A DNA stretch of 64,000 nucleotides from IMG/VR virus record IMGVR_UViG_3300032287_003113, positions 62,001 to 126,000 of that record. The stretch is one strand, 5' to 3'. The translations under genes were made by a program, and so were the position numbers. Below, piece after piece: positions 1 through 58,537 of this stretch (the first letter of the stretch is position 1; each line of letters starts with the position of its first letter). Under the pieces are notes generated by a model. That model was not told where the DNA came from. It did not search any database and was given only the letters and a program-made list of their open reading frames with translations.

Positions 1-643
1 ATTGATCTTCGTCACTGTTTGGTGTGCTTGTGATAATACATTTACCACCAGTGGCCAAGGTAGGAGTAATGGAAGTCCAAAAGTCTGCGGCAATGGTGGG
101 GCGAACAAACGCAAACTCGTCGCAGTATAGGAGTGATATACTCATGCCTCGTCCGGTGTTTTCTGTTGTGGTTTGACTTACTATGCGGCTACCATTTTCA
201 AAGTCTAAGCTACCTTTGTTGTAACTGGTTACACCGGCTCGGATATAATCCGGACAGTTTTCATAAGCATAACGGACACGTTGCATGATCTCTTGAGCAC
301 CTAGGTACTTGTGAGCAGCTACCAAGATGGTTGTATCTGGCACAAACATGGCATACCATAGCAAGTAGCCAGCGGCCGTGGTCGATTTGCCCGTTTGTCT
401 TGGCATTAGGCTTATACTGAATCTATAATGATGATAAGACTCAATCAATCGTTCTTGGTATTCAAAAGGATGATATTGTATGGCACCGCGGGTAGGGTGT
501 TGTATAAAGAAATAGTTCTTCATAAAGTAATCTGGGCCTGTTACAGGATCAGCACAGCGGGCTAACTCTAAGATCTGTTGCTCAGTGTAAGACATCCGTT
601 TGTACGGTGCCTTGATAATTGCAGTCTCTAACTCTTTACTCAT
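1..643 (-). CDS. gp17: Terminase large subunit, N-terminal ATPase part (runs off window start)
   Basis: Manual translation from ATG at 643: MSKELETAIIKAPY...HPFEYQERLI...MPRQTGKSTT (Walker A)...GRGMSISLLYCDEFAF (Walker B)...IITSTPN; T4-type TerL motifs. Not in the ORF track. Confidence 0.95.
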   Translation of the reverse strand, partial: MSKELETAIIKAPYKRMSYTEQQILELARCADPVTGPDYFMKNYFFIQHPTRGAIQYHPFEYQERLIESYHHYRFSISLMPRQTGKSTTAAGYLLWYAMFVPDTTILVAAHKYLGAQEIMQRVRYAYENCPDYIRAGVTSYNKGSLDFENGSRIVSQTTTENTGRGMSISLLYCDEFAFVRPTIAADFWTSITPTLATGGKCIITSTPNSDEDQ

Positions 644-656
644 ATAAGTATATTTA

Positions 657-1184
657 ATGTCAGATACATTGTTACTCAATCAAAATTACCAACCAATTAG
701 TGTGCTACCCCTTAGTGTTATCAATTGGCAACACGCAATCAAACTCATGTACCTGGGTCGTGTTCATGTGTTGGAAACCTATCCCAATTGGATAGTACAC
801 TCAGAACGCCTGGCTCTAAATGTGCCCAGTGTTTGTGTGACCCGAGACTACTTTCACTACAAACAGGCTGTTAAATTCAGCAGATATAATCTTTACATGC
901 GAGACTTATTCAAGTGTCAATATTGTGATGATGTGTTTGACTACGAAGATCTGACCATTGATCATGTGAAACCTCGTAGCCTGGGTGGCAAAACAGTCTG
1001 GGAAAATTGTGTTACCAGTTGTAAAACTTGTAATCATGCCAAAGGCAGTCATTTGCTATTGCCCAAGGTAAAACCGTACAAACCAGATTATTATAGTCTA
1101 GTTGGACAATGGAAGAAAATGCCGTTTACAGTTAAACAAGATTCGTGGAATCAATACTTGGGGTTAGATAAGCGAGTAGCTTAA
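657..1184 (+). CDS. HNH endonuclease (McrA-like)
   Basis: RDLFKCQYC...LTIDHVKPRSLGGKTVWENCVTSCKTCNHAKG. Confidence 0.9.
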   Translation: MSDTLLLNQNYQPISVLPLSVINWQHAIKLMYLGRVHVLETYPNWIVHSERLALNVPSVCVTRDYFHYKQAVKFSRYNLYMRDLFKCQYCDDVFDYEDLTIDHVKPRSLGGKTVWENCVTSCKTCNHAKGSHLLLPKVKPYKPDYYSLVGQWKKMPFTVKQDSWNQYLGLDKRVA

Positions 1185-1196
1185 AGGAAAATAAAA

Positions 1197-1754
1197 ATGA
1201 AAATAGCCATTACCGGACATACCCTGGGAATTGGAAAAGCCTTGGCAGAAGTATATCAACAACACGGACATGCTGTAGTTGGGTTTAGTCGATCCACAGG
1301 TCACGACATTTCGACTATTGATGGTCGCACACGTATTATTACAGAATCAGCCGATTGTGATTTATTTTTCAACAATGCTCATGCCGACTTTTCACAATGT
1401 GATTTATTATTTGAGTTATGGATGTCTTGGAAAAATCAAAAAAAATATATTGTAAACATTTCATCTGCTCACAGCGTAAAATGGGTATATTTTTTAAAAG
1501 ATCAGGTCAGTGATATCAAGTATTGTAGCGTTAAAAAAGCACTAGAGGAATCTGCAGAATTTTTGTGGAACCAATTGGATTGGCCCGCAGTATCAATCGT
1601 TTCTCCGTGTCGTACAGATACTCCCAGAGTAGCACATAGAGATTGGAGTAACAAAGTTGATCCGACGGAATTTGCTAACCTGGTATATACCACGTTGATT
1701 CAGAATAATTTTAGAGTGCAGAGATTAAGCCTGGCCAACAGACCCATCGATTAG
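1197..1754 (+). CDS. Short-chain dehydrogenase/reductase-like NAD(P)-binding protein
   Basis: ITGHTLGIG Rossmann motif, FFNNA, IVNISS, YCSVK (YxxxK); SD AAGGA upstream. Confidence 0.8.
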   Translation: MKIAITGHTLGIGKALAEVYQQHGHAVVGFSRSTGHDISTIDGRTRIITESADCDLFFNNAHADFSQCDLLFELWMSWKNQKKYIVNISSAHSVKWVYFLKDQVSDIKYCSVKKALEESAEFLWNQLDWPAVSIVSPCRTDTPRVAHRDWSNKVDPTEFANLVYTTLIQNNFRVQRLSLANRPID

Positions 1755-2146
1755 TTGTTGTTAGGGAAACTTCTGGGACGATACTCAGGATGTTTGGTTA
1801 GATATTCTTCTACCTTGTCACGCAGGCTACCTGTCATATAAGGCAAACTAAAATTAATCAAGAACCATAGATCAGTTCCAGGCATGACATGATATTCTTT
1901 TAATAGGTCATTGCGTTCTTTGGCGGTATAACTGATGTTACTGCCCACAGGACTCTGTATGCCTGCTTCGGCAGCTTGTGGTACTGTGTTATGACCGGTG
2001 TACATGCCAGCACCAGCTTCTAGCAAGCCTGTTATCCCAGCAAGACGTTTAATTTCTGCCAGATCGTTTGTATCCATGACCGCATCAGCGTCGCCTGATT
2101 CCCCAGGCAATACAAAGTCCGCTTGTGTTATGCGATACTGTTTCAT
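1751..2146 (-). CDS. Hypothetical protein (carries EIKRLAGI motif; possible head internal protein)
   Basis: Coupled ORF in the minus-strand head cluster; motif shared with the scaffold C-terminus. Confidence 0.6.
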   Translation of the reverse strand: MKQYRITQADFVLPGESGDADAVMDTNDLAEIKRLAGITGLLEAGAGMYTGHNTVPQAAEAGIQSPVGSNISYTAKERNDLLKEYHVMPGTDLWFLINFSLPYMTGSLRDKVEEYLTKHPEYRPRSFPNNN

Positions 2147-2490
2147 TTTAGTTTACGGATAGGCCCACGTGCTGTTACCGGGCTTTGATTGTTAACAATA
2201 TCTAATTCTTTTGATTCTTTGCCGGTGTTGTTTCTACTGGTGTAGCCCATGTTTTTGGCTGCACCTTGTATTATTTCACGCTCAGCGTCGGTATAAGCCA
2301 CTGTTACTAATTCTGGGCCAGTTGGGCCTTCGGTGTCTGTGTCACGATGTGGTTGTGCTGCCATGCTTAGACCAAATCTATAAGCGGCATACGGGTTGTT
2401 ATTGGTTTCTGGCCAACTGGCTAGATCAGGGATTGCGTTTATCGCAGCTTTGCGAAACTTACTTTCCTGGACAATTTCGACAATTTTCAT
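2143..2490 (-). CDS. Hypothetical protein, paralog of 2487..2861; putative internal head protein
   Basis: MKIVEIVQE N-terminus; AIPDL..W...NNNPYAAYRFG...QSPVTARGPIRK shared with neighbour. Confidence 0.7.
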   Translation of the reverse strand: MKIVEIVQESKFRKAAINAIPDLASWPETNNNPYAAYRFGLSMAAQPHRDTDTEGPTGPELVTVAYTDAEREIIQGAAKNMGYTSRNNTGKESKELDIVNNQSPVTARGPIRKLK

Positions 2491-2861
2491 TTTGGTTTAC
2501 GGATAGGACCTTGAGCTTTAACTGGACTCTTGATGTTAATCAAATCTGTTTCAAACGATCCATCACCGGATTGTTGTTCGGGTGTTATCCCTAGATAATT
2601 CTGTGCAGCACGGATTTTATCATTGTCGGCTTCGCTGTAACCAATGGTAGTGAATCTTCCGCCAATGGGTCCGTAGGGTTTCAATGGTAGGTCAGGTGCA
2701 CCAGCCAATGCAATACCATATCGATAGGCACCGTAGGCATTGTTGTTGTTGTCTAGTTCGTCCCAGGTTTTCAAATTTGGGATAGCACGTATGGCACTGG
2801 GACGCAGTTTTGCACGTCCTGTTTTTGCCTGAGCTTCTTGGATGATTTCTGTTATTTTCAT
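2487..2861 (-). CDS. Hypothetical protein, paralog of 2143..2490; putative internal head protein
   Basis: Start corrected to ATG 2861 (MKITEIIQE), 1 nt after the upstream stop; AIPNL..W...NNNNAYGAYRYG...KSPVKAQGPIRK. Confidence 0.7.
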   Translation of the reverse strand: MKITEIIQEAQAKTGRAKLRPSAIRAIPNLKTWDELDNNNNAYGAYRYGIALAGAPDLPLKPYGPIGGRFTTIGYSEADNDKIRAAQNYLGITPEQQSGDGSFETDLINIKSPVKAQGPIRKPK

Positions 2862-2862
2862 A

Positions 2863-3366
2863 TTACCAGGCCCTGCATGACCAATAACGTGCTTTGGTGC
2901 GTGGACCAGGATTGGCACAGTTGTGTCTAGCACGGAAGCTCTTTCGACGTTTTGGATTAGATTTTTTAATCTTCATGGTTTTGTCGCCAAAATTTACTTT
3001 GACTACTTTGCCAGTTTTGGGATTCTTTACGTACACCTTGGATTTTTTAACATCGCCCTTCATGGGACGACCCAACGGAACTTCACGGCCTTGATATTTG
3101 GCTTCAGGTACGTCATCTTCTTCTACTGCTTCTTCTTCTGAATGAAGATTGATGTGATCGTAGTGTGAGCTGTGATCTCTTGAGTAAGTTTCTAATAGAG
3201 AAACTACAGAATCTGTGCCGGCAATTACAATACCGTCTTCCACGATGGCAATGACTTCAGATTCAATCACTTCTGTTGGACTTAATTCAAGATCAAACAA
3301 ATCGCCCACAATTGGATTGTTGTGGGCGTGTTCTGCGTCAGAGACATAGTCTTTGAAGCTTTTCAT
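2863..3366 (-). CDS. Hypothetical protein, acidic N-half and very basic C-terminal domain; putative internal head protein
   Basis: MKSFKDYVSDAE N-terminus; C-terminal KVNFGD...RRKSFRARHNC...ARYWSCRAW. Confidence 0.7.
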   Translation of the reverse strand: MKSFKDYVSDAEHAHNNPIVGDLFDLELSPTEVIESEVIAIVEDGIVIAGTDSVVSLLETYSRDHSSHYDHINLHSEEEAVEEDDVPEAKYQGREVPLGRPMKGDVKKSKVYVKNPKTGKVVKVNFGDKTMKIKKSNPKRRKSFRARHNCANPGPRTKARYWSCRAW

Positions 3367-5207
3367 TAGTTGACTTTCTTAATACTCTCGTATTCAGCAG
3401 CTAATTGAGCTTCCAATGAAAGTGTTGCTTCGCTTACACGGTTACCTTTGTTGGTAAAAGGGTTTGCGGCCTTGTTGGCAGTGGCAGGATCTTGACTCTT
3501 TTCACGATTCATGTCGTCACCTTGTGTGGTGATTGTTTTGATACTGGCATACTTGGGACGAGGCTTGTTGACTGCTTCGGGAGCATCAGCAACATCAACC
3601 TTAGCTTCATCAATGTCTTTGGTTTTGATAGCATTGGTGCCAGGAATCTTGTCGCCAATTGCGACATCGTCGTCTGCTAGCCCCGCTGTGAATGCGTTGC
3701 CTTCGTTGGGTTCTTCAGTGATTTCATCTGTGTTGAAAATTTGACCAAATGCATTGAACTTGTCTTTGCCTGACTTCTCTGCAGCAGCATCTTGTTGTTT
3801 GATATATTCGCCACGACTGACTTCGCTTAGTCCAGCCAATTTGGCCAGTTCATCCAGTTCAGACGCTAGTGAATCTTCTTCGTAGTAGTTACGACCTTGA
3901 CCTTTTAACAATGCTGATTTGCCTGGGATTTGACTTGCTGGCAAGTTGCCTGGAATACCCATTGGTGTCTTAGGAGCATCTTTAACGTGTGCAAACGGAT
4001 CAGGGCGATCAAATTGGTCCATTTTACTGGGCACTTGTGCGGCTTCGTCAGCGACCATTTTGCCATGATAACCCTTGATCTCCATACAGTCACGTAACAA
4101 CTCACTGCAATGACCTGTTTCTTTAAACACTTTCATGTCGTTACTGAGTTCAGCCAACATTTCGTCAACTGTCTGATGTTTTTCTTTTAACAAGTTAGCA
4201 AAGTTTACACCTTCAGTAAGTCTATGTGCTAGATTGTCCATGCTTTCTGCCACTGATTTTTTGGAATCTTTTTTTGCAACTGTTTTTTCAGCATCTGGTT
4301 TCACACGACCGAATGGATCATGACCCATTTTGTTTTTGCTGGAGAATGGCAAACTGTCTTTGCTACTTTTCTCTCCGGTACTGTGTTTGCTTGGACGACC
4401 GCGGCCACGCTTCTCACCTGTGTCGGCTTTCTTGGCATGCTTGCGTGGACGACCACGCTTGCCTTTGTTTTCATCATCTTTGTCTTCGTCATCATCACTT
4501 TGATAACCAGGATAATCTTTTTTAGTATGACGGGTCACACCATCTTTGTGACTGACTTCGCCGCCTTTGTGTGTGGTTGCTTTTTCTTCAAAAAATCTTT
4601 CGTCTTGCAACAGTTTATCTACTTGGCTTGTGGAGATATTGAACTCGTCGGCCACTTGCTCAATGGCTTCTTCTGGTTCCATTTCATAACCTTTTTGCTG
4701 ATAAAAAGTATCATTTAGTTGTGCCAATCGAGCACGGATTTTTTTCACTAACTCAACTGTTGGTTTTACTTTGACTTCTTCCATCTTGGTATGTTCACAA
4801 CTACCTTCGGTCATGCCACATTCGTTGCATGTGCCTTCTCCAACGTGTTGCGGTAAACCTTTGTGCTTGGTAGCGGCAAAGTCCGTGGCATCTTTTTTGC
4901 CCATTGATTTGGCTACCTTGGCTACAGCTGGACTGGCGGCCTTAGAACCTTTTTGTGCGGCGTGAACCATGCCCATGAATTTTTGTTGAGCTTGGCTAAC
5001 TGCCTTCTCTTCAATTTTACTTTTGGCAAATTGTTCAGCTAGGCGTTGCTGTACTGAATCAACTCCAGCAAGGATACTACCTTGTGCTTCAACGCTTTCG
5101 CGGATTTCTTTTACAAGAGCAAAACGCTTTTCTTCTGCGGTTGGCTTGAGTGCTTCTAGTTTGCCTAGAATACTGTAGATGTTATCGTGTGAATGATTGT
5201 TGCTCAT
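3366..5207 (-). CDS. Large charged low-complexity protein with AT-hook-like motifs; putative core/internal head protein
   Basis: 613 aa, E/K-rich; KRGRPRK and RGRGRPSK; AVSQAQQKFMG module; ELAKLAGL motif. Confidence 0.65.
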   Translation of the reverse strand: MSNNHSHDNIYSILGKLEALKPTAEEKRFALVKEIRESVEAQGSILAGVDSVQQRLAEQFAKSKIEEKAVSQAQQKFMGMVHAAQKGSKAASPAVAKVAKSMGKKDATDFAATKHKGLPQHVGEGTCNECGMTEGSCEHTKMEEVKVKPTVELVKKIRARLAQLNDTFYQQKGYEMEPEEAIEQVADEFNISTSQVDKLLQDERFFEEKATTHKGGEVSHKDGVTRHTKKDYPGYQSDDDEDKDDENKGKRGRPRKHAKKADTGEKRGRGRPSKHSTGEKSSKDSLPFSSKNKMGHDPFGRVKPDAEKTVAKKDSKKSVAESMDNLAHRLTEGVNFANLLKEKHQTVDEMLAELSNDMKVFKETGHCSELLRDCMEIKGYHGKMVADEAAQVPSKMDQFDRPDPFAHVKDAPKTPMGIPGNLPASQIPGKSALLKGQGRNYYEEDSLASELDELAKLAGLSEVSRGEYIKQQDAAAEKSGKDKFNAFGQIFNTDEITEEPNEGNAFTAGLADDDVAIGDKIPGTNAIKTKDIDEAKVDVADAPEAVNKPRPKYASIKTITTQGDDMNREKSQDPATANKAANPFTNKGNRVSEATLSLEAQLAAEYESIKKVN

Positions 5208-5209
5208 GT

Positions 5210-5794
5210 TTACTTTCCTTTTGCCTTGTGTACTTTGTTTTGGTTTGTGCCAACTGGACTGGTGGTGCCAACATTTTCTGCTGTCATTACGCCAGTGGTT
5301 TTTTCAGTAGCGGCAAAATCAAATTTGCGACTTTCCAATTCTTTGATCAAACTACCAATACGAAGTTGTCCGGCTAACTCTTGACCGCCTTCGTCAGCTT
5401 TTAACTCTTCTTCATCCAGCAAAGCACCTTCATGATCTTTGCCACGTGCTTCTGCTTCGTCTGTGTTGACTGCGTCACCTAAGGTACGTACACAGATCCA
5501 GTCTGGATTCAATTGAGCACGTTCTTTGATTGTTTGGCGGATCTGCGGAACTGTGACAGGGTATGCAACTTTGATGTCAAATGTCCAACACTCGCAAGGA
5601 CCCCATTGTGGGAATTCACGGTGTTCTTGTATGGGCAAACTTTTAACAGCACTGACGCTTTCTAACTGATAAGTTTCCAGTGCATGTTTAATGCGGTCCA
5701 TTACTTCCCCTTTGGGGTTAATGGTAGCTAGTTTGATACGAAACTCGTATGGCTTGTTTAATTCGGCGATGTAAGTTTGGAATGGTTTCATCAT
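5210..5794 (-). CDS. Hypothetical protein with T4 capsid-targeting-like N-terminus
   Basis: MMKPFQTYIAE compared with T4 IPIII MKTYQEFIAE; own TATAAATA promoter and SD. Confidence 0.7.
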   Translation of the reverse strand: MMKPFQTYIAELNKPYEFRIKLATINPKGEVMDRIKHALETYQLESVSAVKSLPIQEHREFPQWGPCECWTFDIKVAYPVTVPQIRQTIKERAQLNPDWICVRTLGDAVNTDEAEARGKDHEGALLDEEELKADEGGQELAGQLRIGSLIKELESRKFDFAATEKTTGVMTAENVGTTSPVGTNQNKVHKAKGK

Positions 5795-5811: not shown

Positions 5812-5819
5812 TATTTATA
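5812..5819 (-). promoter_or_regulatory. T4-type late promoter TATAAATA
   Basis: Perfect consensus, followed by AGGA SD and ATG 5794. Confidence 0.8.
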
Positions 5820-6297
5820 CTTTTTTGTTTAATATTTGTTTTAGCAATTCGTTGCGATCCAGCACAACTCCTTGCCCGTCTATGGCTGCTTCCACTGGAT
5901 CTTTGGCATCTTTTTTGATCTGGTGATCCAGCTTGGCTTTGGCCAACTGTAACTGTACCATTTTTAACTTTTTATCTAGCTTGGCAGTTTTGGCTGTGAT
6001 AGCGTGTCCCAACATTACACCAGCTGTTTGTAAGATAACACCCGAAAAGCGTGGCTCTACATTCATGCCCAGATCTATCAGATCTTCAGCTTTGCTCTGT
6101 GCCAACTGTGCCAATTCATCCAGCTCGGTATCACCGGTGTCTAAATTGTGTACTGTGGGTAGTGCAGCATCAATCTTATCTATAGCAAGATTAACTTCGG
6201 TGATTATGTCGCGGTTTTCTTCAATTATCTGCTCGGCTTCTTCGGCAGTAGCATCCGTGGATGGTAGGTTAAACAGCTCTTCTAATTTTTTAGTCAT
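5815..6297 (-). CDS. Helical hypothetical protein, possibly terminase small subunit-like
   Basis: 160 aa, coiled-coil character, ends ..RNELLKQIL; size and context only, no diagnostic motif. Confidence 0.4.
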   Translation of the reverse strand: MTKKLEELFNLPSTDATAEEAEQIIEENRDIITEVNLAIDKIDAALPTVHNLDTGDTELDELAQLAQSKAEDLIDLGMNVEPRFSGVILQTAGVMLGHAITAKTAKLDKKLKMVQLQLAKAKLDHQIKKDAKDPVEAAIDGQGVVLDRNELLKQILNKKV

Positions 6298-6740: not shown

Positions 6741-7120
6741 ATCAATACTGTGCGAGAAACCAGGGGATTAGTATTGTTTGTTCGTTTGACGCCAATGGTA
6801 CTGGTAGGTGCTCGATTGGCGTTTAAGAATGCAGCAAGATAGTTGTTGAGTTCACCAGCTGGTAATTTTTGAAACTCGCTCAGCACCATCATTGGATCCA
6901 AGTTTTGTGCTTGTGCTGTGTACAACACCACCGCAGCTAAATTTTTAGCTGAAGTTTTGTTCTGTGTGCGTTTTTCAAAGAAAGCTACAATAGCATCATC
7001 AGCTGGCCCTGACGTAAATTCTTTAGAATAGAAATTATTAAAATATTTTCTAGCGTCATTGACAGCAACCGAAGTGTCTGGTGGTGCTAAATTAGTTGCG
7101 GTAGAGATTTGATTATTCAA
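6737..7120 (-). CDS. Hypothetical protein (tail/baseplate operon)
   Basis: 127-aa ORF overlapping both neighbours by 4 nt. Confidence 0.6.
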   Translation of the reverse strand: MNNQISTATNLAPPDTSVAVNDARKYFNNFYSKEFTSGPADDAIVAFFEKRTQNKTSAKNLAAVVLYTAQAQNLDPMMVLSEFQKLPAGELNNYLAAFLNANRAPTSTIGVKRTNNTNPLVSRTVLI

Positions 7121-8595
7121 AATAGACCCCCATAGGAAGCTTCACTTAATGCCGCTGTACTAAAACTGGCACTAAATTCGTTAGCAATGTCTCTTGTTAA
7201 ATCACCAAATGCCGTTGAAATATCGCCGACTAAACTTCCAACTTGGTCCTTGATAAATCCTGATGCTTGATCAATCAATGGTTGTGTTAGCTCAGTTACA
7301 TAGGAACCAACCTGTTGCATAGCATAGGTGGCTGCCATGTTGGTCACTGTGGCCAGGGCCGCTTGAGGGTTTTGTATAGCTGACGCAATTAGATTAATAG
7401 TGGCTCCGCCATTGGGCCCAAGACCTGCGGCTAGTCCACCAATCAGTCCATTGGCCGCGGAGCTTACTACGCCGCCCACGATATTAGACGCTTGTGCTTG
7501 TATCTGTTGCTGTATTTGTGCGGCACTGGTAATGCCCTGTGTTAAACTGCCAAGACTTGGCACACTGAATCCACCGGCATTGACTCCGCCCACACCTGCA
7601 GAAATTGATGTGCCAGTACCAAACAATCTTCCAAACACACTGGGTTGTGCTGATGTTGTACCGGCACCAAAATTTATGGGTGCGGTTGCATCGGTGTATA
7701 GTGGACTAATGCCTGCCAGGTCGGTGATTTGATCTGGCGCACGGTTATATCCACCTTGGCCATTGTCTACCAGGTCTGTTCCGTCTCTTGGAGCAATAGG
7801 ACTTGGCATCTTGTCATAGTGCAAATCAATAAATCCGCCGGCGTTGTTGGCAGTGGTATAGCCTGTTAGATATTTTACTGTTTCATACTGTATGGTCATT
7901 TCGTGACTTAACAAACTGGTTTCGCCATTCACATGATCACCGTGTTTGAACGCAGTGATAGTGGGATTGACCAATTGGTATTCACTAAAATTCTTTTGAT
8001 ACAAGCTGTAAATTCTTATAGCTTGTATGTATTGATAGGCCTGTTGCCCATTTAGGTTGGTACCAACTGTGGGACGTCTTGGACTATAACCCCAATCAAA
8101 GCTGGGACGACTGGCATACTTGTGTGGAGTATTATAGGTGGCGTCAGCATAGTCGGGGTCACGAAAAAAGAAACTGTAGTAGTCATACCAGAAATTTCTT
8201 ACATTGTCGCTTTGGTCATCGTGGAATGATATTTGCACAGGATCATACTTGATGCTATTTTGCACAATGTTTTTACGATTGTAAGCATTGTGTGTTTTGG
8301 TGTCGATAGTAAACTTTGGTAGCGTGGCACTTTTGACCAACATGCCTAATTCTCTTGCTGGAGCATTGCCACTACCCATGCTTTTGTATTGCAAGGTTTG
8401 ATCGGAGATATTTGTAATCAATGGATTAAAATCAAATTCCACATAAAACAAAAATCCATATTTGGGACTTAGTCGGAAATTGTCGTCGGTGAATATTCTT
8501 GCCGCATGGCGGTAGTCATACATTTGCCCGCGAGGATTTGTAACTGTATTTGGGTAATTAACTTGAGACGATGATAAATGTTTATTAATGCTCAT
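7117..8595 (-). CDS. Tail-tube-fold protein (gp19/gp54-like) with Gly/Ala-rich C-terminal extension
   Basis: LVKSATLPKFTIDT...YNRK...KYDPVQISFHDD parallels the adjacent tube protein (VVDIKRP...YNSK...INFRDD). Confidence 0.65.
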   Translation of the reverse strand: MSINKHLSSSQVNYPNTVTNPRGQMYDYRHAARIFTDDNFRLSPKYGFLFYVEFDFNPLITNISDQTLQYKSMGSGNAPARELGMLVKSATLPKFTIDTKTHNAYNRKNIVQNSIKYDPVQISFHDDQSDNVRNFWYDYYSFFFRDPDYADATYNTPHKYASRPSFDWGYSPRRPTVGTNLNGQQAYQYIQAIRIYSLYQKNFSEYQLVNPTITAFKHGDHVNGETSLLSHEMTIQYETVKYLTGYTTANNAGGFIDLHYDKMPSPIAPRDGTDLVDNGQGGYNRAPDQITDLAGISPLYTDATAPINFGAGTTSAQPSVFGRLFGTGTSISAGVGGVNAGGFSVPSLGSLTQGITSAAQIQQQIQAQASNIVGGVVSSAANGLIGGLAAGLGPNGGATINLIASAIQNPQAALATVTNMAATYAMQQVGSYVTELTQPLIDQASGFIKDQVGSLVGDISTAFGDLTRDIANEFSASFSTAALSEASYGGLF

Positions 8596-42542: not shown

Positions 42543-43721
42543 TTACTGGAACGATAGGTTTGATACAGAGATCTCACCAACGTAGTCACCAGCATTACCT
42601 AGCGAAGACGCTGTGTTTGTCAACTCTACATAACCATAACGTGTCATAAATGATACGACTGGTTCGAATGTAGATGGATCTAGAACAACACCAGAACTCA
42701 TCAATGGGATATATGGGCAATAGAACGCAGCTGCATCAGCTTCGCTTGAACCCTTATAACCAACCAATACAGCCTGACTGTCGTTTGCATAACCGTCAAC
42801 ATATACCTTCATTGCACCGTTCAATGTACCAACAAACTTGGTGTTTGTAGGAGCTTCGAATGTACCTTCTGTTGTACGAGCAAATGCACTTGTTGTAGCA
42901 CTTTGTAGTACTGTCAAAGCAGCTGGACTTACAACTGCCCAGTTACCAGCACCACGACGTGTACGCTGAGCGATCTTGTTAGCAACACGGTTAACTAGAA
43001 CTGCCAAAGCGGCATGCTCATCACCAACGAATGTAGCTGTACCAGAAACGGCAGCTTGGTCATATGCTTCATCAGTAGCGGCAAGAGCACGTAGGGAACC
43101 AAGAATCTCTTGATCAATCTCTACAGTAATTTCTTGTGCTAGGGCAGCCATAATTTCTGCCTCAACATCCAAACCGTGCATAGACTGTGCGTCTTGTGCA
43201 GCTTCAAATGTCCAACGAGCACTTAACTTACGTGTTTTAGCTTCTACAACTTGTTTCAAAATCTGAACGTTAATACGGTTACCAGCAACACCTTCTAGTG
43301 TACTAGTTGTATTAGCCATACCAGTAGAGTTACTACCAGAGTATGCTGTTGCAATTTTGAATGGGCTCAATGCCTCATCACCAGCTGTTGTGCTTGTCTG
43401 ATATGCAGATGAATCTGTAACAGAATCAGCATAACGTACACGCAATGTGTGGATTTGAGCTACTGGACCTGTCATTGGCTGTACACCAACGATTTCGTTG
43501 GCGATAACTGTTGGCATTACACGACGGATAACTGGTAGAATTACACGGTTTAGTGTAGCTACGTTACCTGCTTGTGTAGAGCCAGCTGTTGCGTTCTCAG
43601 CCAACATTTTGCGTGTATTCTCAAGGATTACACCCATTGTAGTTCTTTTAGAACCATTTAGACCTTCTAACAGGGCTTCTTTTGTTTCGCCCCAACGGCC
43701 TTCTAATAATGCTTGTGTCAT
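42543..43721 (-). CDS. gp23: Major capsid protein
   Basis: GVQPMTGP, VEAKTRKL.A.WT.E.AQD...HGLD.E.E, EIDQEI, FYCPYIPL, P.TFEP...MTRYG. Confidence 0.97.
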   Translation of the reverse strand: MTQALLEGRWGETKEALLEGLNGSKRTTMGVILENTRKMLAENATAGSTQAGNVATLNRVILPVIRRVMPTVIANEIVGVQPMTGPVAQIHTLRVRYADSVTDSSAYQTSTTAGDEALSPFKIATAYSGSNSTGMANTTSTLEGVAGNRINVQILKQVVEAKTRKLSARWTFEAAQDAQSMHGLDVEAEIMAALAQEITVEIDQEILGSLRALAATDEAYDQAAVSGTATFVGDEHAALAVLVNRVANKIAQRTRRGAGNWAVVSPAALTVLQSATTSAFARTTEGTFEAPTNTKFVGTLNGAMKVYVDGYANDSQAVLVGYKGSSEADAAAFYCPYIPLMSSGVVLDPSTFEPVVSFMTRYGYVELTNTASSLGNAGDYVGEISVSNLSFQ

Positions 43722-43745: not shown

Positions 43746-44864
43746 TTAATTAAGCCCTGCTAAACGTTTCATTTCATAAACATTGGACATTACGTCTTTT
43801 GTTTCTGAAGCTTCAACGGCAGTTTTAGCAGTTTTATCACCAGTTACTACTTGACGACTCTCTGTCAAAACAGCAGCTTTTGGAGCGGCTTCTTTAACAG
43901 CAGAATTGTTTAGTACAGCTGGTAGATACTTTTCATATGCGGACTGTAGCTTATCAGTCTGCACACTCTCGAGTAGGTCACGCATGATTGCTGACTTCTC
44001 TTTGTTCAAAGGTTTCAACATTTCTGCAAGACGTTCTTTGCGTTCTGCTGATTCTTTGATAATACGAATTTCTGTTTCTTTTGATTCAACCAAAGCTTTC
44101 TTATCTTCAATTGCTGATACTGCTTCAGACAATTTCTGAGTTACCATGTCCACTGTGGATTGTAACTCGCGGATTTGTTTGTTCTCATTTAAGTGAGTAA
44201 CAGCAAATTCGCTTGCGAATGCTTCATATAGACGACGACCAAACATGTTCTCGCGAGCAACTTGGATGTCTTCTTTTAGTTGAGTCAGTTCTGACTCTAA
44301 CGAACTGGTTACGGCCTCTTTAACAGCCTCAGCAGATTGTTTTACAAATTTGGCTTGCAGTTCAGCTAATTTAGCTTTACCTTCAGCGACTAGACGAACT
44401 TTAGTTTCCACTACAGCTTTCTTGTCTGCTTCAAATTCTTTGATTTCTTCTGCCAATGCACGGATTGTAAACTGTTCAAGTTTGCTGATAGCATTCTCGT
44501 AAGTTTTACGATCTGCACGTAGTTCTTTGATTTCTTCAGCTAGTTTACTAACTAAGAAATTGTCAAACTTACTTGCACTTTCAACCATTTGCTTTTTAAA
44601 TGCAACACGGTCTTCGGCTAATTGTTGTTTTTCGTCTGCGAACTCTTGCAGTTCAGCAGTGAGAGACTCTGTTACCATTTTGTCTAGAGCTTCAACCATT
44701 ACTGCTTTGTCATGTTGATAACGTTGAGCAAATTCTTCGCGTAATTCTGCACGAACTTGTTCTTTGGCTTCAGTAATGCGTGATTCCCAAGCTTCAGCAA
44801 TAGCTGTCTTGGTCTCTTCATTAATGATTCCGTTATCCAACAATGGTTTGATAGCATCTAACAT
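43746..44864 (-). CDS. gp22: Prohead core scaffold protein
   Basis: Coiled-coil, E/K-rich; lies between protease and MCP. Confidence 0.8.
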   Translation of the reverse strand: MLDAIKPLLDNGIINEETKTAIAEAWESRITEAKEQVRAELREEFAQRYQHDKAVMVEALDKMVTESLTAELQEFADEKQQLAEDRVAFKKQMVESASKFDNFLVSKLAEEIKELRADRKTYENAISKLEQFTIRALAEEIKEFEADKKAVVETKVRLVAEGKAKLAELQAKFVKQSAEAVKEAVTSSLESELTQLKEDIQVARENMFGRRLYEAFASEFAVTHLNENKQIRELQSTVDMVTQKLSEAVSAIEDKKALVESKETEIRIIKESAERKERLAEMLKPLNKEKSAIMRDLLESVQTDKLQSAYEKYLPAVLNNSAVKEAAPKAAVLTESRQVVTGDKTAKTAVEASETKDVMSNVYEMKRLAGLN

Positions 44865-44876
44865 TGGATATTTCTC

Positions 44877-45509
44877 CTATAGTTTTAAATCTTTGATCAA
44901 GGCTGCAATGCCCTCTTTCAGGTACTTCTGTACTTTTTGATCTTGAGCGGCTTCACGTGCCGTTTCAAATACCTTAGCACCACCACGCATGTTCATCAAG
45001 CCTTCATAGATGGCTTTTGGATACGCATGAGGAGCACTAGGTTGTGCTACGATGTCTACGGTAATGATTTCAAAATCACTAACGTGTCCACTTCCTTCAT
45101 TGACATTACCTGATCCACGCGATGATACACCTAGCTTAACACCAGAGGTTATCATGGCTTCTACTAGTTGTCCCATTGGGGTTGGCAATACCTTTAATTT
45201 ACCACGTCCTGTTGGACCATCCATCCACATCTTTTCAATCATGTGGCTTACGCGGTCTAGGTTAATCTTTAAATCATCTGGATGATCTACTTCACCCAAC
45301 ACAGAATAACCTTCATTGATTTGTTTGTTGATGGTATTAACAGCTTTTTCTATTTCATGGACAGGGTATACTCGTTCATTGGCGTTCTTTACTCCGCCTT
45401 CGATGAATATACCCTCCATTTTTAGAGATTTCTTGCCATTCTCGTCGACGGACTCAACAATCAAGCCCGCCCGATCAAATGTAAGATTCTCTTTTAGGTA
45501 CAAAGCCAT
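44877..45509 (-). CDS. gp21: Prohead protease
   Basis: NANERVYP, LGEVDHP, INLDRVSH, TPMG, LGVSSRGSG, DIVAQPSAP.A. Confidence 0.95.
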   Translation of the reverse strand: MALYLKENLTFDRAGLIVESVDENGKKSLKMEGIFIEGGVKNANERVYPVHEIEKAVNTINKQINEGYSVLGEVDHPDDLKINLDRVSHMIEKMWMDGPTGRGKLKVLPTPMGQLVEAMITSGVKLGVSSRGSGNVNEGSGHVSDFEIITVDIVAQPSAPHAYPKAIYEGLMNMRGGAKVFETAREAAQDQKVQKYLKEGIAALIKDLKL

Positions 45510-45522
45510 TTGTAGTTCCTAA

Positions 45523-46473
45523 TTATTTACGAACTGGGCTCTTGTCGTTTGTAGGCACGCTACCATCGGTAGTTTGACCTTCGCCTGACTTGGCTGTTTC
45601 TTTGGTTTTAAAAGAGTTACCAGCTTTTCCACCTGGAACATTGATGTTACCAGATTTGATTTCTTGTGGCTTTTCGCTTGATGGAGCACTTGTTCCGTCT
45701 GGGTTGCTTTCGCCGCCCTTGGTCTTAACTGCTGTACCACCAAAGTCAGCACCAGGACCAGTTACAGACTTGGTGTTAACACTTGTCTTTTTACCAGATC
45801 CAGCAACTGCGTCGCCTTCGGCTGCATCACCAGCACCACCGTAGATATCACCAATGCGGTCTACATACTCACGCATTAATTCAGAAGTAGATAGTTTGCG
45901 TGAATTGTCACGTGATTCCTTGGCTTCTTCTTTTTTATCTTCTTTGTCTTCTTCGTCGTCGCAATCTTCTTCATCGGACTCTTCGGCTTCCATCATGCCC
46001 ATTTCGGCTATTTTTGGCTCTTCGGCACCCATGTCGTCCATTGCTGGCATTTCTGCAGACATTTCGTCTGAATCATTGTCGCCCATGATTTCGTCAAACT
46101 TAGCTAATAGCTCGTCTAACTTGGCATCAATGTTCATGATTTTGTCGTCTTCGGCTTCTTCGTCATGACCAACTTCGGCTGGCATGTCGCCTGTCATTTC
46201 ACCATCGTCTTCACCATCTGGGTCAAGACTAAATTCTTCTTCGCCTTCTTCATCAGCTTCGCCCACTGCTTCTTCGCCAGCTAGTTGATTTGTTAGTTCT
46301 TCAACTTGCTCACCAGCAACAGGTCCGCCCATGTTTTCTTCGACTTGCTCTTCGTCCATAATGGACTCATAGATGTCACGGCTTTTTTCTACTACGATTG
46401 TGTGAAATAATTCACGTGCTTTTTGATCTTCATCGTTAATGATGTATTCAATTAATTTTTCAAACTTGTTCAT
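45523..46473 (-). CDS. Highly acidic prohead core-like protein (gp67/68 position)
   Basis: D/E-rich, 316 aa, between portal and protease; late promoter 46504-46509 and AGGAG SD. Confidence 0.6.
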   Translation of the reverse strand: MNKFEKLIEYIINDEDQKARELFHTIVVEKSRDIYESIMDEEQVEENMGGPVAGEQVEELTNQLAGEEAVGEADEEGEEEFSLDPDGEDDGEMTGDMPAEVGHDEEAEDDKIMNIDAKLDELLAKFDEIMGDNDSDEMSAEMPAMDDMGAEEPKIAEMGMMEAEESDEEDCDDEEDKEDKKEEAKESRDNSRKLSTSELMREYVDRIGDIYGGAGDAAEGDAVAGSGKKTSVNTKSVTGPGADFGGTAVKTKGGESNPDGTSAPSSEKPQEIKSGNINVPGGKAGNSFKTKETAKSGEGQTTDGSVPTNDKSPVRK

Positions 46474-48520: not shown

Positions 48521-48553
48521 ATATGTTCTCTCGTATGCTATATTTATAGCTGG

Positions 48554-50984: not shown

Positions 50985-51018
50985 CCTATAAATATATAGG
51001 TATATCAACTTATTTATT
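50985..51018. promoter_or_regulatory. Overlapping face-to-face late promoters for tape measure and gp26
   Basis: TATAAATA on + (50987-94) inside CCTATA-AATA-TATAGG; AATAAATA on - (51011-18). Confidence 0.75.
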
Positions 51019-58529: not shown

Positions 58530-58537
58530 TATAAATA
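58530..58537 (+). promoter_or_regulatory. Late promoter TATAAATA for the baseplate operon
   Basis: Perfect consensus, AGGA SD, ATG 58559. Confidence 0.8.

What the first reader, a model, noticed from the sequence alone, without database searches (positions are those of the whole stretch)
2143..5794. Cluster of proteins with T4 capsid-targeting-like N-termini
The N-termini MMKPFQTYIAE, MKSFKDYVSDAE, MKITEIIQE and MKIVEIVQE resemble the T4 internal-protein targeting sequence (MKTYQEFIAE, cleaved after Glu by gp21). They sit in one late operon. Inference: a set of packaged and injected proteins of unknown function. In T4 such proteins include an anti-restriction factor (IPI*).
Basis: partly seen in the sequence, partly recalled or inferred. 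Interest (0 to 1): 0.6.

Follow-up and report, generated by a model that had tools for sequence, protein, structure and literature searches.

The report
Candidate internal head proteins, jumbo phage
A late-gene cluster in an uncultured T4-related jumbo phage encodes proteins whose conserved N-terminal tags match the T4 signal that loads proteins into the capsid and is then clipped off, so they are probably carried inside the virion: a known mechanism on new cargo.

Summary
The four N-termini are real and sit on five tightly packed minus-strand genes (P1 5210-5794, P2 3366-5207, P3 2863-3366, P4 2487-2861, P5 2143-2490), behind a conserved T4-late-type promoter box. The window also encodes a T4 gp21-family (S77) protease, a gp23-type capsid protein and a scaffold.

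All four L/I-x-E sites of the capsid protein lie in its first 42 residues. An L-x-E sits at the predicted maturation point in six related phages.

Support is strongest for P4/P5. In 28 locus-derived and 120 database homologues, the MKIxEIIxE leader is the most conserved segment. It is followed by a hypervariable linker. The rest of the protein is specifically purged of L/I-x-E (1 site seen against 23 expected; 7 against 46). T4 IPII and IPIII show the same pattern.

P1 is homologous and syntenic to virion proteins detected by mass spectrometry in PA5oct and phAPEC6. P3 is a leader plus extension fused to a small domain that stands alone in other phages.

Cleavage, internal location and injection are inferred, not shown. 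Anti-defence function is untested.

Extra finding: a short motif (…KRLAGL) at the scaffold C-terminus recurs in P2 and the next gene. It may be a second incorporation signal.

The parts
5812..5819 (-). T4-late-type promoter box TATAAATA, 17 nt upstream of the P1 ATG
   Evidence: all 4 copies in the window lie just upstream of gene starts on the matching strand, although the count itself is not enriched; an xTAAATA box plus ATATAGGA is conserved upstream of P1 in 32 related loci.
5210..5794 (-). P1, 194 aa. Leader residues 1-11 (5762-5794, ends I-A-E), then a ferredoxin-like alpha/beta domain (16-104), then a disordered tail ending in an SPVGT…K-rich motif
   Evidence: phrog_14802 'virion structural protein' E 3.4e-5. 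BLASTP 2e-8 to PA5oct gp282, annotated ESI-MS/MS. hhalign 95% to 121Q gp557. phAPEC6 gp270c gave 4 peptides and 41% coverage.
3366..5207 (-). P2, 613 aa. Conserved N-terminal module (residues 1-67, 5007-5207, with I-R-E37, L-A-E58, I-E-E67), DUF3008 (69-122, 4842-5003), two AT-hook-like GRP motifs (4386-4460), a mosaic low-complexity body, and the conserved motif ELDELAKLAGLSE (450-462, 3822-3860)
   Evidence: The protein at the same position in PA5oct (gp281) is MS-detected and carries the same motif twice.
2863..3366 (-). P3, 167 aa. Leader residues 1-12 (3331-3366), an acidic extension with I-V-E43 and L-L-E59, then a C-terminal basic domain (88-167, 2866-3105) of the phrog_7595 / DUF5754-like family
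   Evidence: The C-terminal domain is a stand-alone protein of about 80 aa in pelagiphages, roseophages and a Nitrosopumilaceae spindle-shaped virus.
2487..2861 (-). P4, 124 aa. Leader MKITEIIQE (2835-2861). The mature part is 12.4 kDa, pI 9.6, and has no L/I-x-E. It carries an invariant S-x-E (102-104) and an SPV…GPIRKPK tail
2143..2490 (-). P5, 115 aa, a paralogue of P4 (44% identity). Leader MKIVEIVQE (2464-2490). The mature part is 11.6 kDa, pI 9.0, and has no L/I-x-E
1751..2146 (-). o131, the last gene of the cluster. It carries NDLAEIKRLAGI (residues 27-38, 2033-2068), which resembles the scaffold C-terminus, and an SPVGSNIS motif
44877..45509 (-). Prohead protease, T4 gp21 family (Peptidase_S77), with His (GEVDHP) and Ser (GVSSRG) motifs present
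   Evidence: Pfam 87 bits against a cut-off of 27. phrog_207 4e-58. T4 gp21 structure 5jbl E 2.7e-14. T4 gp21 sequence for comparison.
42543..43721 (-). Major capsid protein (Gp23 family). Predicted propeptide is residues 1-42 (43596-43721) and holds all four L/I-x-E sites (E7, E19, E34, E42)
43746..44864 (-). Scaffold (gp22 position) with 21 L/I-x-E sites. Its C-terminus NVYEMKRLAGLN (43749-43784) is shared as a motif with P2 and o131
45523..46473 (-). Acidic 316-aa protein between portal and protease. Its N-terminus (MNKFEKLIEY…ARELF) resembles T4 gp67, a prohead core protein, by eye
   Evidence: The comparison was by eye only and was not scored.

Best explanation
The genes from P1 to o131 form a late-transcribed module of head-associated proteins in an uncultured jumbo phage. 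The phage has about 360 kb and belongs to the T4 superfamily; its capsid protein is 61-73% identical to those of PA5oct, Phosso, 121Q, RaK2 and Atu_ph07. The proposed mechanism follows T4. Short N-terminal leaders (MK-x-F-x-x-Y-[LIV]… in P1 and P3, MKIxEIIxE in P4 and P5) bring the proteins into the scaffolding core while the prohead assembles. The gp21-family protease then cuts after the Glu of an L/I/V-x-E site at about residue 9-12. The mature proteins stay in the head with the DNA. P4 and P5 (about 12 kDa, basic, with no further cleavage motif) are the closest functional analogues of T4 IPII/IPIII. P1 is a conserved virion protein of this phage supergroup. P3 delivers a small basic domain that other phages make as a free cytoplasmic protein. 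Shown here: the genes, the leaders and their conservation, the protease gene, the distribution of the motif, and homology of P1 to MS-detected virion proteins. Inferred: targeting, cleavage, internal location, and exit with the DNA.
For: (1) Protease and substrates. There is an S77 protease with catalytic motifs. The capsid protein has 4 of 4 L/I-x-E sites in its first 42 residues (4 seen against 1.1 expected, p 0.008; 0 against 2.0 expected in the remaining 350 residues). An L-x-E lies directly before the conserved xATAGAT segment in all six related phages, although the middle residue varies. This segment aligns to residue 11 of mature T4 gp23*. The scaffold has 21 sites against 7.6 expected. 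(2) P4/P5 family. Among 28 homologues with a mean column identity of 35%, M1, K2 and I3 are invariant and E9 is 96% conserved. The leader is the best-conserved 9-residue stretch of 116, and residues 10-25 are hypervariable. [LIV]xE is present at residue 9 or 10 in 28 of 28, yet only 1 further site occurs against 23 expected, while control motifs have observed/expected ratios of 0.6-1.7. An independent set of 120 database proteins confirms this: 116 carry the leader, and the mature parts have 7 [LI]xE against 46 expected, the most depleted of 10 motifs tested. (3) T4 control. ipII and ipIII start with the published CTS, and each has exactly one L/I-x-E, at residue 10. Size and pI match P4/P5 (CTS and gp21 motif from PMC8442874 and PMC9026906). 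(4) P1. BLASTP gives 2e-8 from residue 1 to PA5oct gp282, which is annotated ESI-MS/MS. hhalign gives 95% to 121Q gp557, annotated 'structural protein', with L-T-E aligned to I-A-E. phAPEC6 gp270c, gp268c and gp267c were detected in virions. The order tube, tube, gp4-like, x, P1, x…, terL is conserved. (5) Modularity and turnover. The same leader type sits on unrelated cargo: the P3 DUF5754-like domain, an 81-aa ORF in L030, and a different C-terminus in L056. The P3-P5 slot varies in content and copy number among loci whose flanking genes are 70-96% identical. PMC3012670 describes this pattern for T4 internal proteins. (6) There is a late-type promoter box upstream of P1. (7) 121Q and phAPEC6 contain an inner body whose proteins are unknown (PMC5646251 and PMC7247149).
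Against: There are no proteomic or N-terminal data for this phage. No cleavage has been shown in any member of the supergroup. In P1 the Glu is not conserved outside the clade (PA5oct Y-D-A, Phosso L-S-S, RaK2 L-T-D). The predicted leader helix runs straight into the first strand of the fold. The mature part is not depleted of the motif (observed/expected 1.5-1.9). The P3 copy here lacks a canonical site at the leader (V-S-D-A-E); only E12 is invariant. P2 has no MK leader. Homologue sets are related sequences, so the depletion counts are not independent events. The control motifs in the larger set scatter widely (0.4-3.0). Virion detection in relatives does not show an internal location. Injection is pure analogy.
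Confidence: 0.6

Rival explanations
1. The proteins are prohead core or scaffold accessory proteins (like T4 gp67/gp68). They help build or size the very large head, are cut into pieces by the protease, and are largely expelled rather than retained and injected.
For: P1 and P2 keep several L/I-x-E sites (P1 at 57, 91, 128, 152; P2 has 10). The sites at 128 and 152 lie in the predicted disordered tail of P1. P2 and o131 share the scaffold C-terminal motif. P1 is as conserved as core structural genes.
Against: P1 homologues and the proteins at the P2 position are found in mature virions of PA5oct and phAPEC6. The P4/P5 family has sites only in the leader, which is the signature of proteins that survive maturation intact.
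Confidence: 0.2
2. They are ordinary virion or assembly proteins whose N-terminal helices are structural. The likeness to the T4 targeting sequence is coincidental, and no cleavage occurs.
For: The N-helix of P1 is conserved in homologues that lack the Glu. MK-initiated amphipathic helices are common. The pattern fixed in advance also hits about 12 other ORFs in the record.
Against: This does not explain why the P4/P5 family keeps [LIV]xE at residue 9 in about 144 of 148 sequences while removing it from the rest of the protein. It also does not explain why the leader is followed by a hypervariable linker, or why the same leader type heads unrelated cargo.
Confidence: 0.12
3. They are non-virion accessory factors of DNA packaging, placed between a small-terminase-position gene and the large terminase because they act with the terminase.
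For: The cluster lies between o160 (5815-6297) and terL, and this position is conserved across the supergroup. P2 has AT-hook-like DNA-binding motifs.
Against: o160 shows no similarity to T4 gp16, so the terminase link is only positional. P1 homologues and their neighbours are virion components by mass spectrometry. The motif depletion points to exposure to the head protease.
Confidence: 0.05

Closest known systems
T4 internal proteins IPII and IPIII (capsid targeting sequence MKTYQEFIAE, removed by gp21)
   Same: An MK-initiated leader of about 10 residues ends in L/I-x-E. There is a single protease motif per protein. The mature proteins are small and basic (IPII* 9.8 kDa, pI 9.6; P4 12.4 kDa, pI 9.6). 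The phage has a gp21-family protease. The cargo is hypervariable behind a conserved leader.
   Different: The mature parts share no sequence similarity. The P4/P5 leader is a distinct consensus (MKIxEIIxE) with a tandem site (I-x-E5 plus I-x-E9). The genes are clustered next to terL rather than scattered. Packaging and injection are not demonstrated.
Virion proteins PA5oct gp282/gp281, 121Q gp557-561, phAPEC6 gp270c/268c/267c, RaK2 ORF047-051
   Same: P1 is a homologue. The gene order is the same, after the tail tube genes and the gp4-like gene. Several carry L/I-x-E within their first 10 residues, for example 121Q gp557, gp558, gp560 and gp561. PA5oct gp281 carries the LAG motif.
   Different: The P3, P4 and P5 families have no detectable homologues in cultured phages. 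The published studies list those proteins as virion-associated and do not assign location or processing.
phiKZ / 201phi2-1 / SPN3US inner-body and ejection proteins
   Same: They are sets of head-internal proteins with propeptides removed after Glu by a gp21-related protease in jumbo phages (PMC9026906).
   Different: Their cleavage motif is S/A/G-x-E and their propeptides are long. There is no sequence relationship. That lineage has different capsid and replication genes.
T4 prohead core proteins gp67 and gp68
   Same: They are small proteins of the scaffolding core that gp21 processes at several sites. The window has a gp67-like acidic protein at the same position.
   Different: gp67 and gp68 lie between the portal and protease genes and are mostly degraded. 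P4 and P5 look built to survive.

Membership tests
T4-type capsid-targeted internal proteins (CTS plus gp21 processing) | N-terminal leader of about 10 residues ending in L/I-x-E | tested here: met
   P1 has I-A-E11. P4 has I-T-E5 and I-Q-E9. P5 has I-V-E5 (V-Q-E9 is non-canonical). P3 is not canonical here (V-S-D10, D-A-E12), while 5 of 7 relatives have L/I-x-E10.
T4-type capsid-targeted internal proteins (CTS plus gp21 processing) | The phage encodes a gp21-family prohead protease | tested here: met
   Peptidase_S77 at 87 bits. Match to T4 gp21 structure 5jbl at 2.7e-14. His and Ser motifs are present.
T4-type capsid-targeted internal proteins (CTS plus gp21 processing) | The protease of this phage cuts after L/I-x-E | tested here: inconclusive
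   The evidence is indirect only. All capsid-protein sites lie in the predicted propeptide. An L-x-E is conserved at the predicted maturation point in six phages. The scaffold is enriched 2.8-fold. There are no cleavage data.
T4-type capsid-targeted internal proteins (CTS plus gp21 processing) | Only the leader is removed; the mature protein lacks further sites | tested here: met
   Met for the P4/P5 family: 1 against 23 expected, and 7 against 46 expected. T4 IPII and IPIII have exactly one site each. Not met for P1 (observed/expected 1.5-1.9) or P2.
T4-type capsid-targeted internal proteins (CTS plus gp21 processing) | Leader conserved while cargo diverges | tested here: met
   For many database homologues, BLASTP to P4 aligns only 7-10% of P4, at 64-89% identity.
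T4-type capsid-targeted internal proteins (CTS plus gp21 processing) | Protein present inside DNA-filled heads | not testable with these tools
   Only by homology: P1 relatives are MS-detected in PA5oct and phAPEC6 virions. Location within the virion is unknown.
T4-type capsid-targeted internal proteins (CTS plus gp21 processing) | Ejected into the host with the DNA | not testable with these tools
   No data.
phrog_14802 / jumbo-phage virion structural protein (PA5oct gp282 type) | Sequence homology over the N-terminal domain, and conserved gene position | tested here: met
   P1 matches phrog_14802 at 3.4e-5 (residues 2-152). BLASTP 2e-8 to gp282. hhalign 95% to 121Q gp557. tblastn 1e-9 to Phosso. 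Synteny is conserved.
phrog_7595 / DUF5754-like small viral protein | Homology to the stand-alone protein of about 80 aa | tested here: met
   P3 residues 88-167 match phrog_7595 at 1.2e-10. tblastn gives 4e-30 to a Pelagibacter phage protein. The Atlas search returned clusters of about 80-aa viral proteins, some carrying PF19058. Pfam itself gave no hit at E 0.1.
DUF3008 (PF11450) | Score at or above Pfam's gathering cut-off | tested here: met
   P2 residues 69-122 score 24.0 bits against a cut-off of 24 (borderline). This is backed by five PHROG families at 1e-12 to 2e-20.

The most novel reading that the evidence does not exclude
The module between the gp4-like gene and terL may be the long-sought gene set for the inner body or internal protein mass of the PA5oct / RaK2 / 121Q / Atu_ph07-type jumbo phages and their very abundant uncultured aquatic relatives. 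Its members would enter the prohead by two separate short signals. One is a T4-like cleavable N-terminal leader (P1, P3, P4, P5). The other is a copy of the scaffold's own C-terminal peptide (…[LI]xx[LIM]x[KR]LAG[LI]), carried internally by P2 and o131 and by the MS-detected PA5oct gp281. The second route would be 'scaffold mimicry' for cargo loading. The fast-evolving P3-P5 slot would then be an arms-race payload delivered with the DNA.
Probability: 0.3. Interest if true: 0.75.

Novelty: new member of a known kind. Interest (0 to 1): 0.5.

Why it matters
T4 is the only system in which a short portable tag is known to load arbitrary proteins into a capsid. The same logic may also hold in their cultured cousins (PA5oct, 121Q, RaK2). 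Of these, 121Q and its close relative phAPEC6 have an inner body whose protein composition is still unknown.

The analysis gives concrete predictions that can be tested cheaply. It names cleavage sites (P4 E9, P5 E5/E9, P1 E11, capsid protein E42). It identifies a new leader consensus that could serve as a packaging tag. It also picks out a hypervariable set of small basic proteins as candidates for early-acting, possibly anti-defence, functions.

Tried and rejected
- **Complex prediction.** A complex of the capsid protein with o131, meant to test the LAG motif, returned no answer (score 0.01). It counts neither for nor against binding.
- **Fold searches.** The P1 core is a generic ferredoxin-like alpha/beta sandwich with only weak matches (S6, PII, HPPK; E about 1e-3). 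Viral matches are uncharacterised proteins, including one from Atu_ph07. P4 has no fold match (best Z 2.1).
- **Family and sequence searches.** Pfam, NCBIfam and PDB sequence searches gave nothing for P1, P4, P5 or o131. P4 has no tblastn match in 50,697 phage records.
- **Small-terminase label.** I first labelled 5815-6297 as small terminase. It has no similarity to T4 gp16, so the label is dropped.
- **T4 scaffold.** The C-terminus of T4 gp22 lacks the LAG motif, so that motif is not a general T4-superfamily feature.
- **Statistics that did not hold up.** The count of TATAAATA in the window is not above chance (4 against 2.85); only its positions are telling. The five-residue LAG pattern is also not enriched genome-wide (4 hits; my rough estimate from amino-acid composition is about 2 expected); its weight comes from conservation and context. 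Motif depletion was sought in P1 and not found. Depletion in the mature capsid protein alone is not significant (p 0.12).
- **Literature.** Searches found nothing on the LAG motif in phages and nothing on this cluster in a jumbo-phage review.
- **Not used.** I did not use the large representative-protein search, the sequencing-run tools or any alternative genetic code.

Full report
**Context**

The window is bases 62001-126000 of a 219,879-bp IMG/VR virus record that CheckV rates 51% complete. Close relatives are uncultured phages of 354-374 kb. The window carries a T4-superfamily morphogenesis set:
- large terminase (2-679, minus strand);
- sheath, tube, a second tube-like protein of 492 aa, and a gp4-like head completion protein;
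- portal, an S77 prohead protease, a scaffold and a Gp23-family capsid protein.

The capsid protein is 61-73% identical to those of Pseudomonas phage PA5oct, Sinorhizobium phage Phosso, Escherichia phage 121Q, Klebsiella phage RaK2 and Agrobacterium phage Atu_ph07. The phage therefore belongs to that jumbo-phage supergroup.

**The observation**

The four N-termini are present as quoted. The true start of P4 is the ATG at 2861. The interval holds five minus-strand genes, P1-P5, followed by o131 (1751-2146). Junctions are 0-2 nt gaps or 1-4 nt overlaps.

A TATAAATA box lies 17 nt upstream of the P1 ATG. All four copies of this octamer in the window sit just upstream of gene starts on the correct strand. 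In 32 related loci an xTAAATA box plus ATATAGGA is conserved at that position. No convincing terminator interrupts the cluster. 'One late operon' is therefore reasonable.

A pattern fixed in advance from the T4 rule hit 15 of 1639 ORF starts in the record, three of them in this cluster. Tighter leader patterns, written after seeing the sequences and so descriptive only, occur in these four genes alone. This holds both in the record and in the complete 357-kb relative.

**Does this phage have the machinery the interpretation needs?**

Yes. The protease scores 87 bits on Peptidase_S77 and aligns to the T4 gp21 structure with the His and Ser motifs intact.

The literature gives the gp21 motif as L/I-x-E and the CTS as the first 10 residues of IPIII (PMC9026906; sequence in PMC8442874). 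Three observations in this phage fit that specificity:
- The capsid protein has four L/I-x-E sites, all in its first 42 residues (p 0.008 for that segment) and none in the remaining 350.
- Residue 41 aligns to residue 11 of mature T4 gp23*.
- In all six related phages an L-x-E lies directly before the conserved xATAGAT segment, although the middle residue differs: A, V, M, T, F, M.

The predicted mature N-terminus here is N43. The scaffold carries 21 sites against 7.6 expected. This makes a T4-like specificity likely, but it is still inference.

**P4 and P5: the strongest case**

The two are paralogues (44% identity). I took 28 family members from related loci; their mean column identity is 35%. 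In that set:
- M1, K2 and I3 are invariant and E9 is 96% conserved.
- The leader is the best-conserved 9-residue stretch of 116.
- Residues 10-25 are an indel-rich hypervariable linker.
- Every member has [LIV]xE at residue 9 or 10.
- The mature parts contain one further site against 23 expected, while nine control motifs have observed/expected ratios of 0.6-1.7.

A profile search then returned 1499 proteins. Of the best 120, 116 carry the leader, and three of the other four keep [LIV]xE at residue 9. Their mature parts hold 7 [LI]xE sites against 46 expected, the most depleted of ten motifs tested. The controls scatter more widely in this set, from 0.4 to 3.0. For many of these proteins, BLASTP to P4 aligned only 7-10% of P4, at 64-89% identity.

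T4 IPII and IPIII, read from the T4 record, show the same design. Each has one L/I-x-E, at residue 10, and a small basic mature part. The structure model of P4 shows a low-confidence detached N-terminus and a small helical core with no known fold.

**P1**

P1 has 466 homologues at E 0.001 or better; the best 120 are at least 70% identical. Its leader ends in I-A-E11.

Its profile matches 121Q gp557, annotated 'structural protein', at 95% probability, with L-T-E aligned to I-A-E. phAPEC6 gp270c, the same protein, gave 4 peptides and 41% coverage in virions, and two neighbours were also detected. Gene order is conserved in all these phages.

Three points count against a simple T4-like reading:
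- The Glu is absent in PA5oct, Phosso and RaK2.
- The predicted leader helix (residues 4-13) abuts the first strand of a ferredoxin-like domain.
- The rest of P1 keeps four conserved sites.

P1 is therefore best called a conserved virion protein with a CTS-like N-terminus. It may be processed at several sites.

**P3 and P2**

Residues 88-167 of P3 belong to a family of stand-alone viral proteins of about 80 aa. These occur in pelagiphages, roseophages and even a Nitrosopumilaceae spindle-shaped virus. Here the domain is fused to an 87-residue extension headed by the leader. In the family, M1, K2, Y7 and E12 are invariant. Five of seven relatives have L/I-x-E10, but this copy has V-S-D10. Canonical sites occur at E43 and E59, before the domain. 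The same leader type also heads an 81-aa ORF in L030 and a different C-terminus in L056.

P2 lacks an MK leader. It has a conserved 67-residue N-terminal module that contains I-x-E37, followed by a mosaic body (DUF3008 and AT-hook-like motifs here). The protein at its position in PA5oct, gp281, is MS-detected.

The slot between P2 and o131 differs in content and copy number among loci whose flanks are 70-96% identical. PMC3012670 describes the same behaviour for T4 internal proteins.

**An unexpected motif**

The scaffold ends in …NVYEMKRLAGLN. P2 carries ELDELAKLAGLSE and o131 carries NDLAEIKRLAGI.

The P2 motif is present in every family member found, although the surrounding sequence is hypervariable, and many members have a second copy. 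All o131 homologues have the motif too.

The scaffold C-terminus is conserved across the supergroup: RRLAGIK in PA5oct, RRLAGIEK in Phosso, KRLAGIKK in Atu_ph07, and a variant L-S-G-I in 121Q and RaK2. PA5oct gp281 has two copies of the motif. Atu_ph07 gp111, Phosso gp410, RaK2 ORF050 and 121Q gp560 carry similar peptides. T4 gp22 does not.

From general knowledge, scaffold C-termini bind the coat protein in P22, phi29 and herpesviruses. I therefore suggest this peptide is a second incorporation signal. The one complex prediction I could run gave no answer, so the idea stays a hypothesis.

**What is known, and what is new**

CTS-tagged, gp21-processed internal proteins with hypervariable cargo are textbook T4 biology. 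Proteolytically processed inner-body proteins are known in phiKZ-like phages.

Four things are new here:
- the protein families themselves;
- the MKIxEIIxE leader consensus;
- the placement of the genes in a conserved module next to terL in a different jumbo-phage supergroup;
- the possible link to the uncharacterised inner body of 121Q and phAPEC6, together with the scaffold-like motif.

I file the finding as new members of a known kind.

**Verdict**

| Item | Result |
|---|---|
| Observation | Confirmed |
| Interpretation | Partly supported |
| P4/P5 | Strong computational support |
| P1 | Virion protein by homology |
| P3 | Plausible |
| Injection and anti-defence roles | Untested |

Confidence in the head-targeting and cleavage model is about 0.6, and interest is 0.5.

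No alternative genetic code, read-mapping tool or large representative search was used.

Noticed in passing
window 43749-43784, 3822-3860, 2033-2068 (all minus strand); L117-L121; L089:5633-7129: The C-terminal peptide of the scaffold (…KRLAGLN) recurs inside P2 and o131. It also recurs in syntenic proteins of PA5oct (MS-detected gp281, two copies), Atu_ph07, Phosso, RaK2 and 121Q. The scaffold C-terminus itself is conserved across this jumbo-phage supergroup but is absent from T4 gp22.
   Followed up: partly
window 2490-2558 (P4), 2146-2214 (P5), 5213-5269 (P1), 1925-1960 (o131): A further shared short motif, S-P-[VM], is followed in P1, P4 and P5 by a Lys-rich C-terminus (P1 TSPVGT…, P4 KSPVKAQGPIRKPK, o131 QSPVGSNIS). 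The P4/P5 family also has an invariant S-x-E about 8 residues upstream, which matches the phiKZ-type cleavage motif. Its meaning is unknown.
   Followed up: no
window 45523-46473 (minus strand): An acidic 316-aa protein lies between the portal and the protease. Its N-terminus (MNKFEKLIEY…ARELF) resembles T4 gp67 by eye, and it has L-I-E9 near the start. It is probably a prohead core protein.
   Followed up: no
window 657-1184 (+) and 1197-1754 (+): An HNH endonuclease on the opposite strand overlaps the terL start and is conserved in most relatives. Next to it is a short-chain-dehydrogenase-like gene found only in the closest relatives (L003, L016). Together they split the cluster from terL.
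   Followed up: partly
window 5812-5819, 48541-48548 (minus strand); 50987-50994, 58530-58537 (plus strand): All four TATAAATA octamers lie 17-37 nt upstream of gene starts on the matching strand (P1, the portal gene, and two plus-strand genes). This suggests T4-type late promoters in this lineage.
   Followed up: partly
G000:C1:217392-218168 and 219284-219772 (minus strand, outside the window): Two further proteins have T4-CTS-like starts (MKSNEFITEAK…, MKISEVFSPLNEK…). They carry Cys-containing basic modules (…CWKGKK…NP…, …KRRKSYC…) that resemble the C-terminal motif of P3. They lie in a replication-gene region.
   Followed up: no
window 7117-8595 (minus strand): A second tail-tube-like protein of 492 aa lies downstream of the 203-aa tube protein, as in PA5oct, where gp286 has the same length. 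RaK2 and 121Q have three tube-like genes.
   Followed up: no
related loci L011, L022, L024, L040 (405-432 aa ORFs) and L012, L035, L036, L041, L070, L075 (252-270 aa ORFs): Alternative occupants of the variable slot have no MK leader. One type starts MS.I.SFPFC…. The other starts MD…(L/I)xE-QIE-xYLGKD…, which may carry its own N-terminal L/I-x-E.
   Followed up: no
window 5815-6297 (minus strand): A 160-aa ORF occupies the position of a small terminase and is conserved in PA5oct, RaK2 and 121Q. It has no detectable similarity to T4 gp16 and matches only phrog_16202, a family of unknown function.
   Followed up: partly
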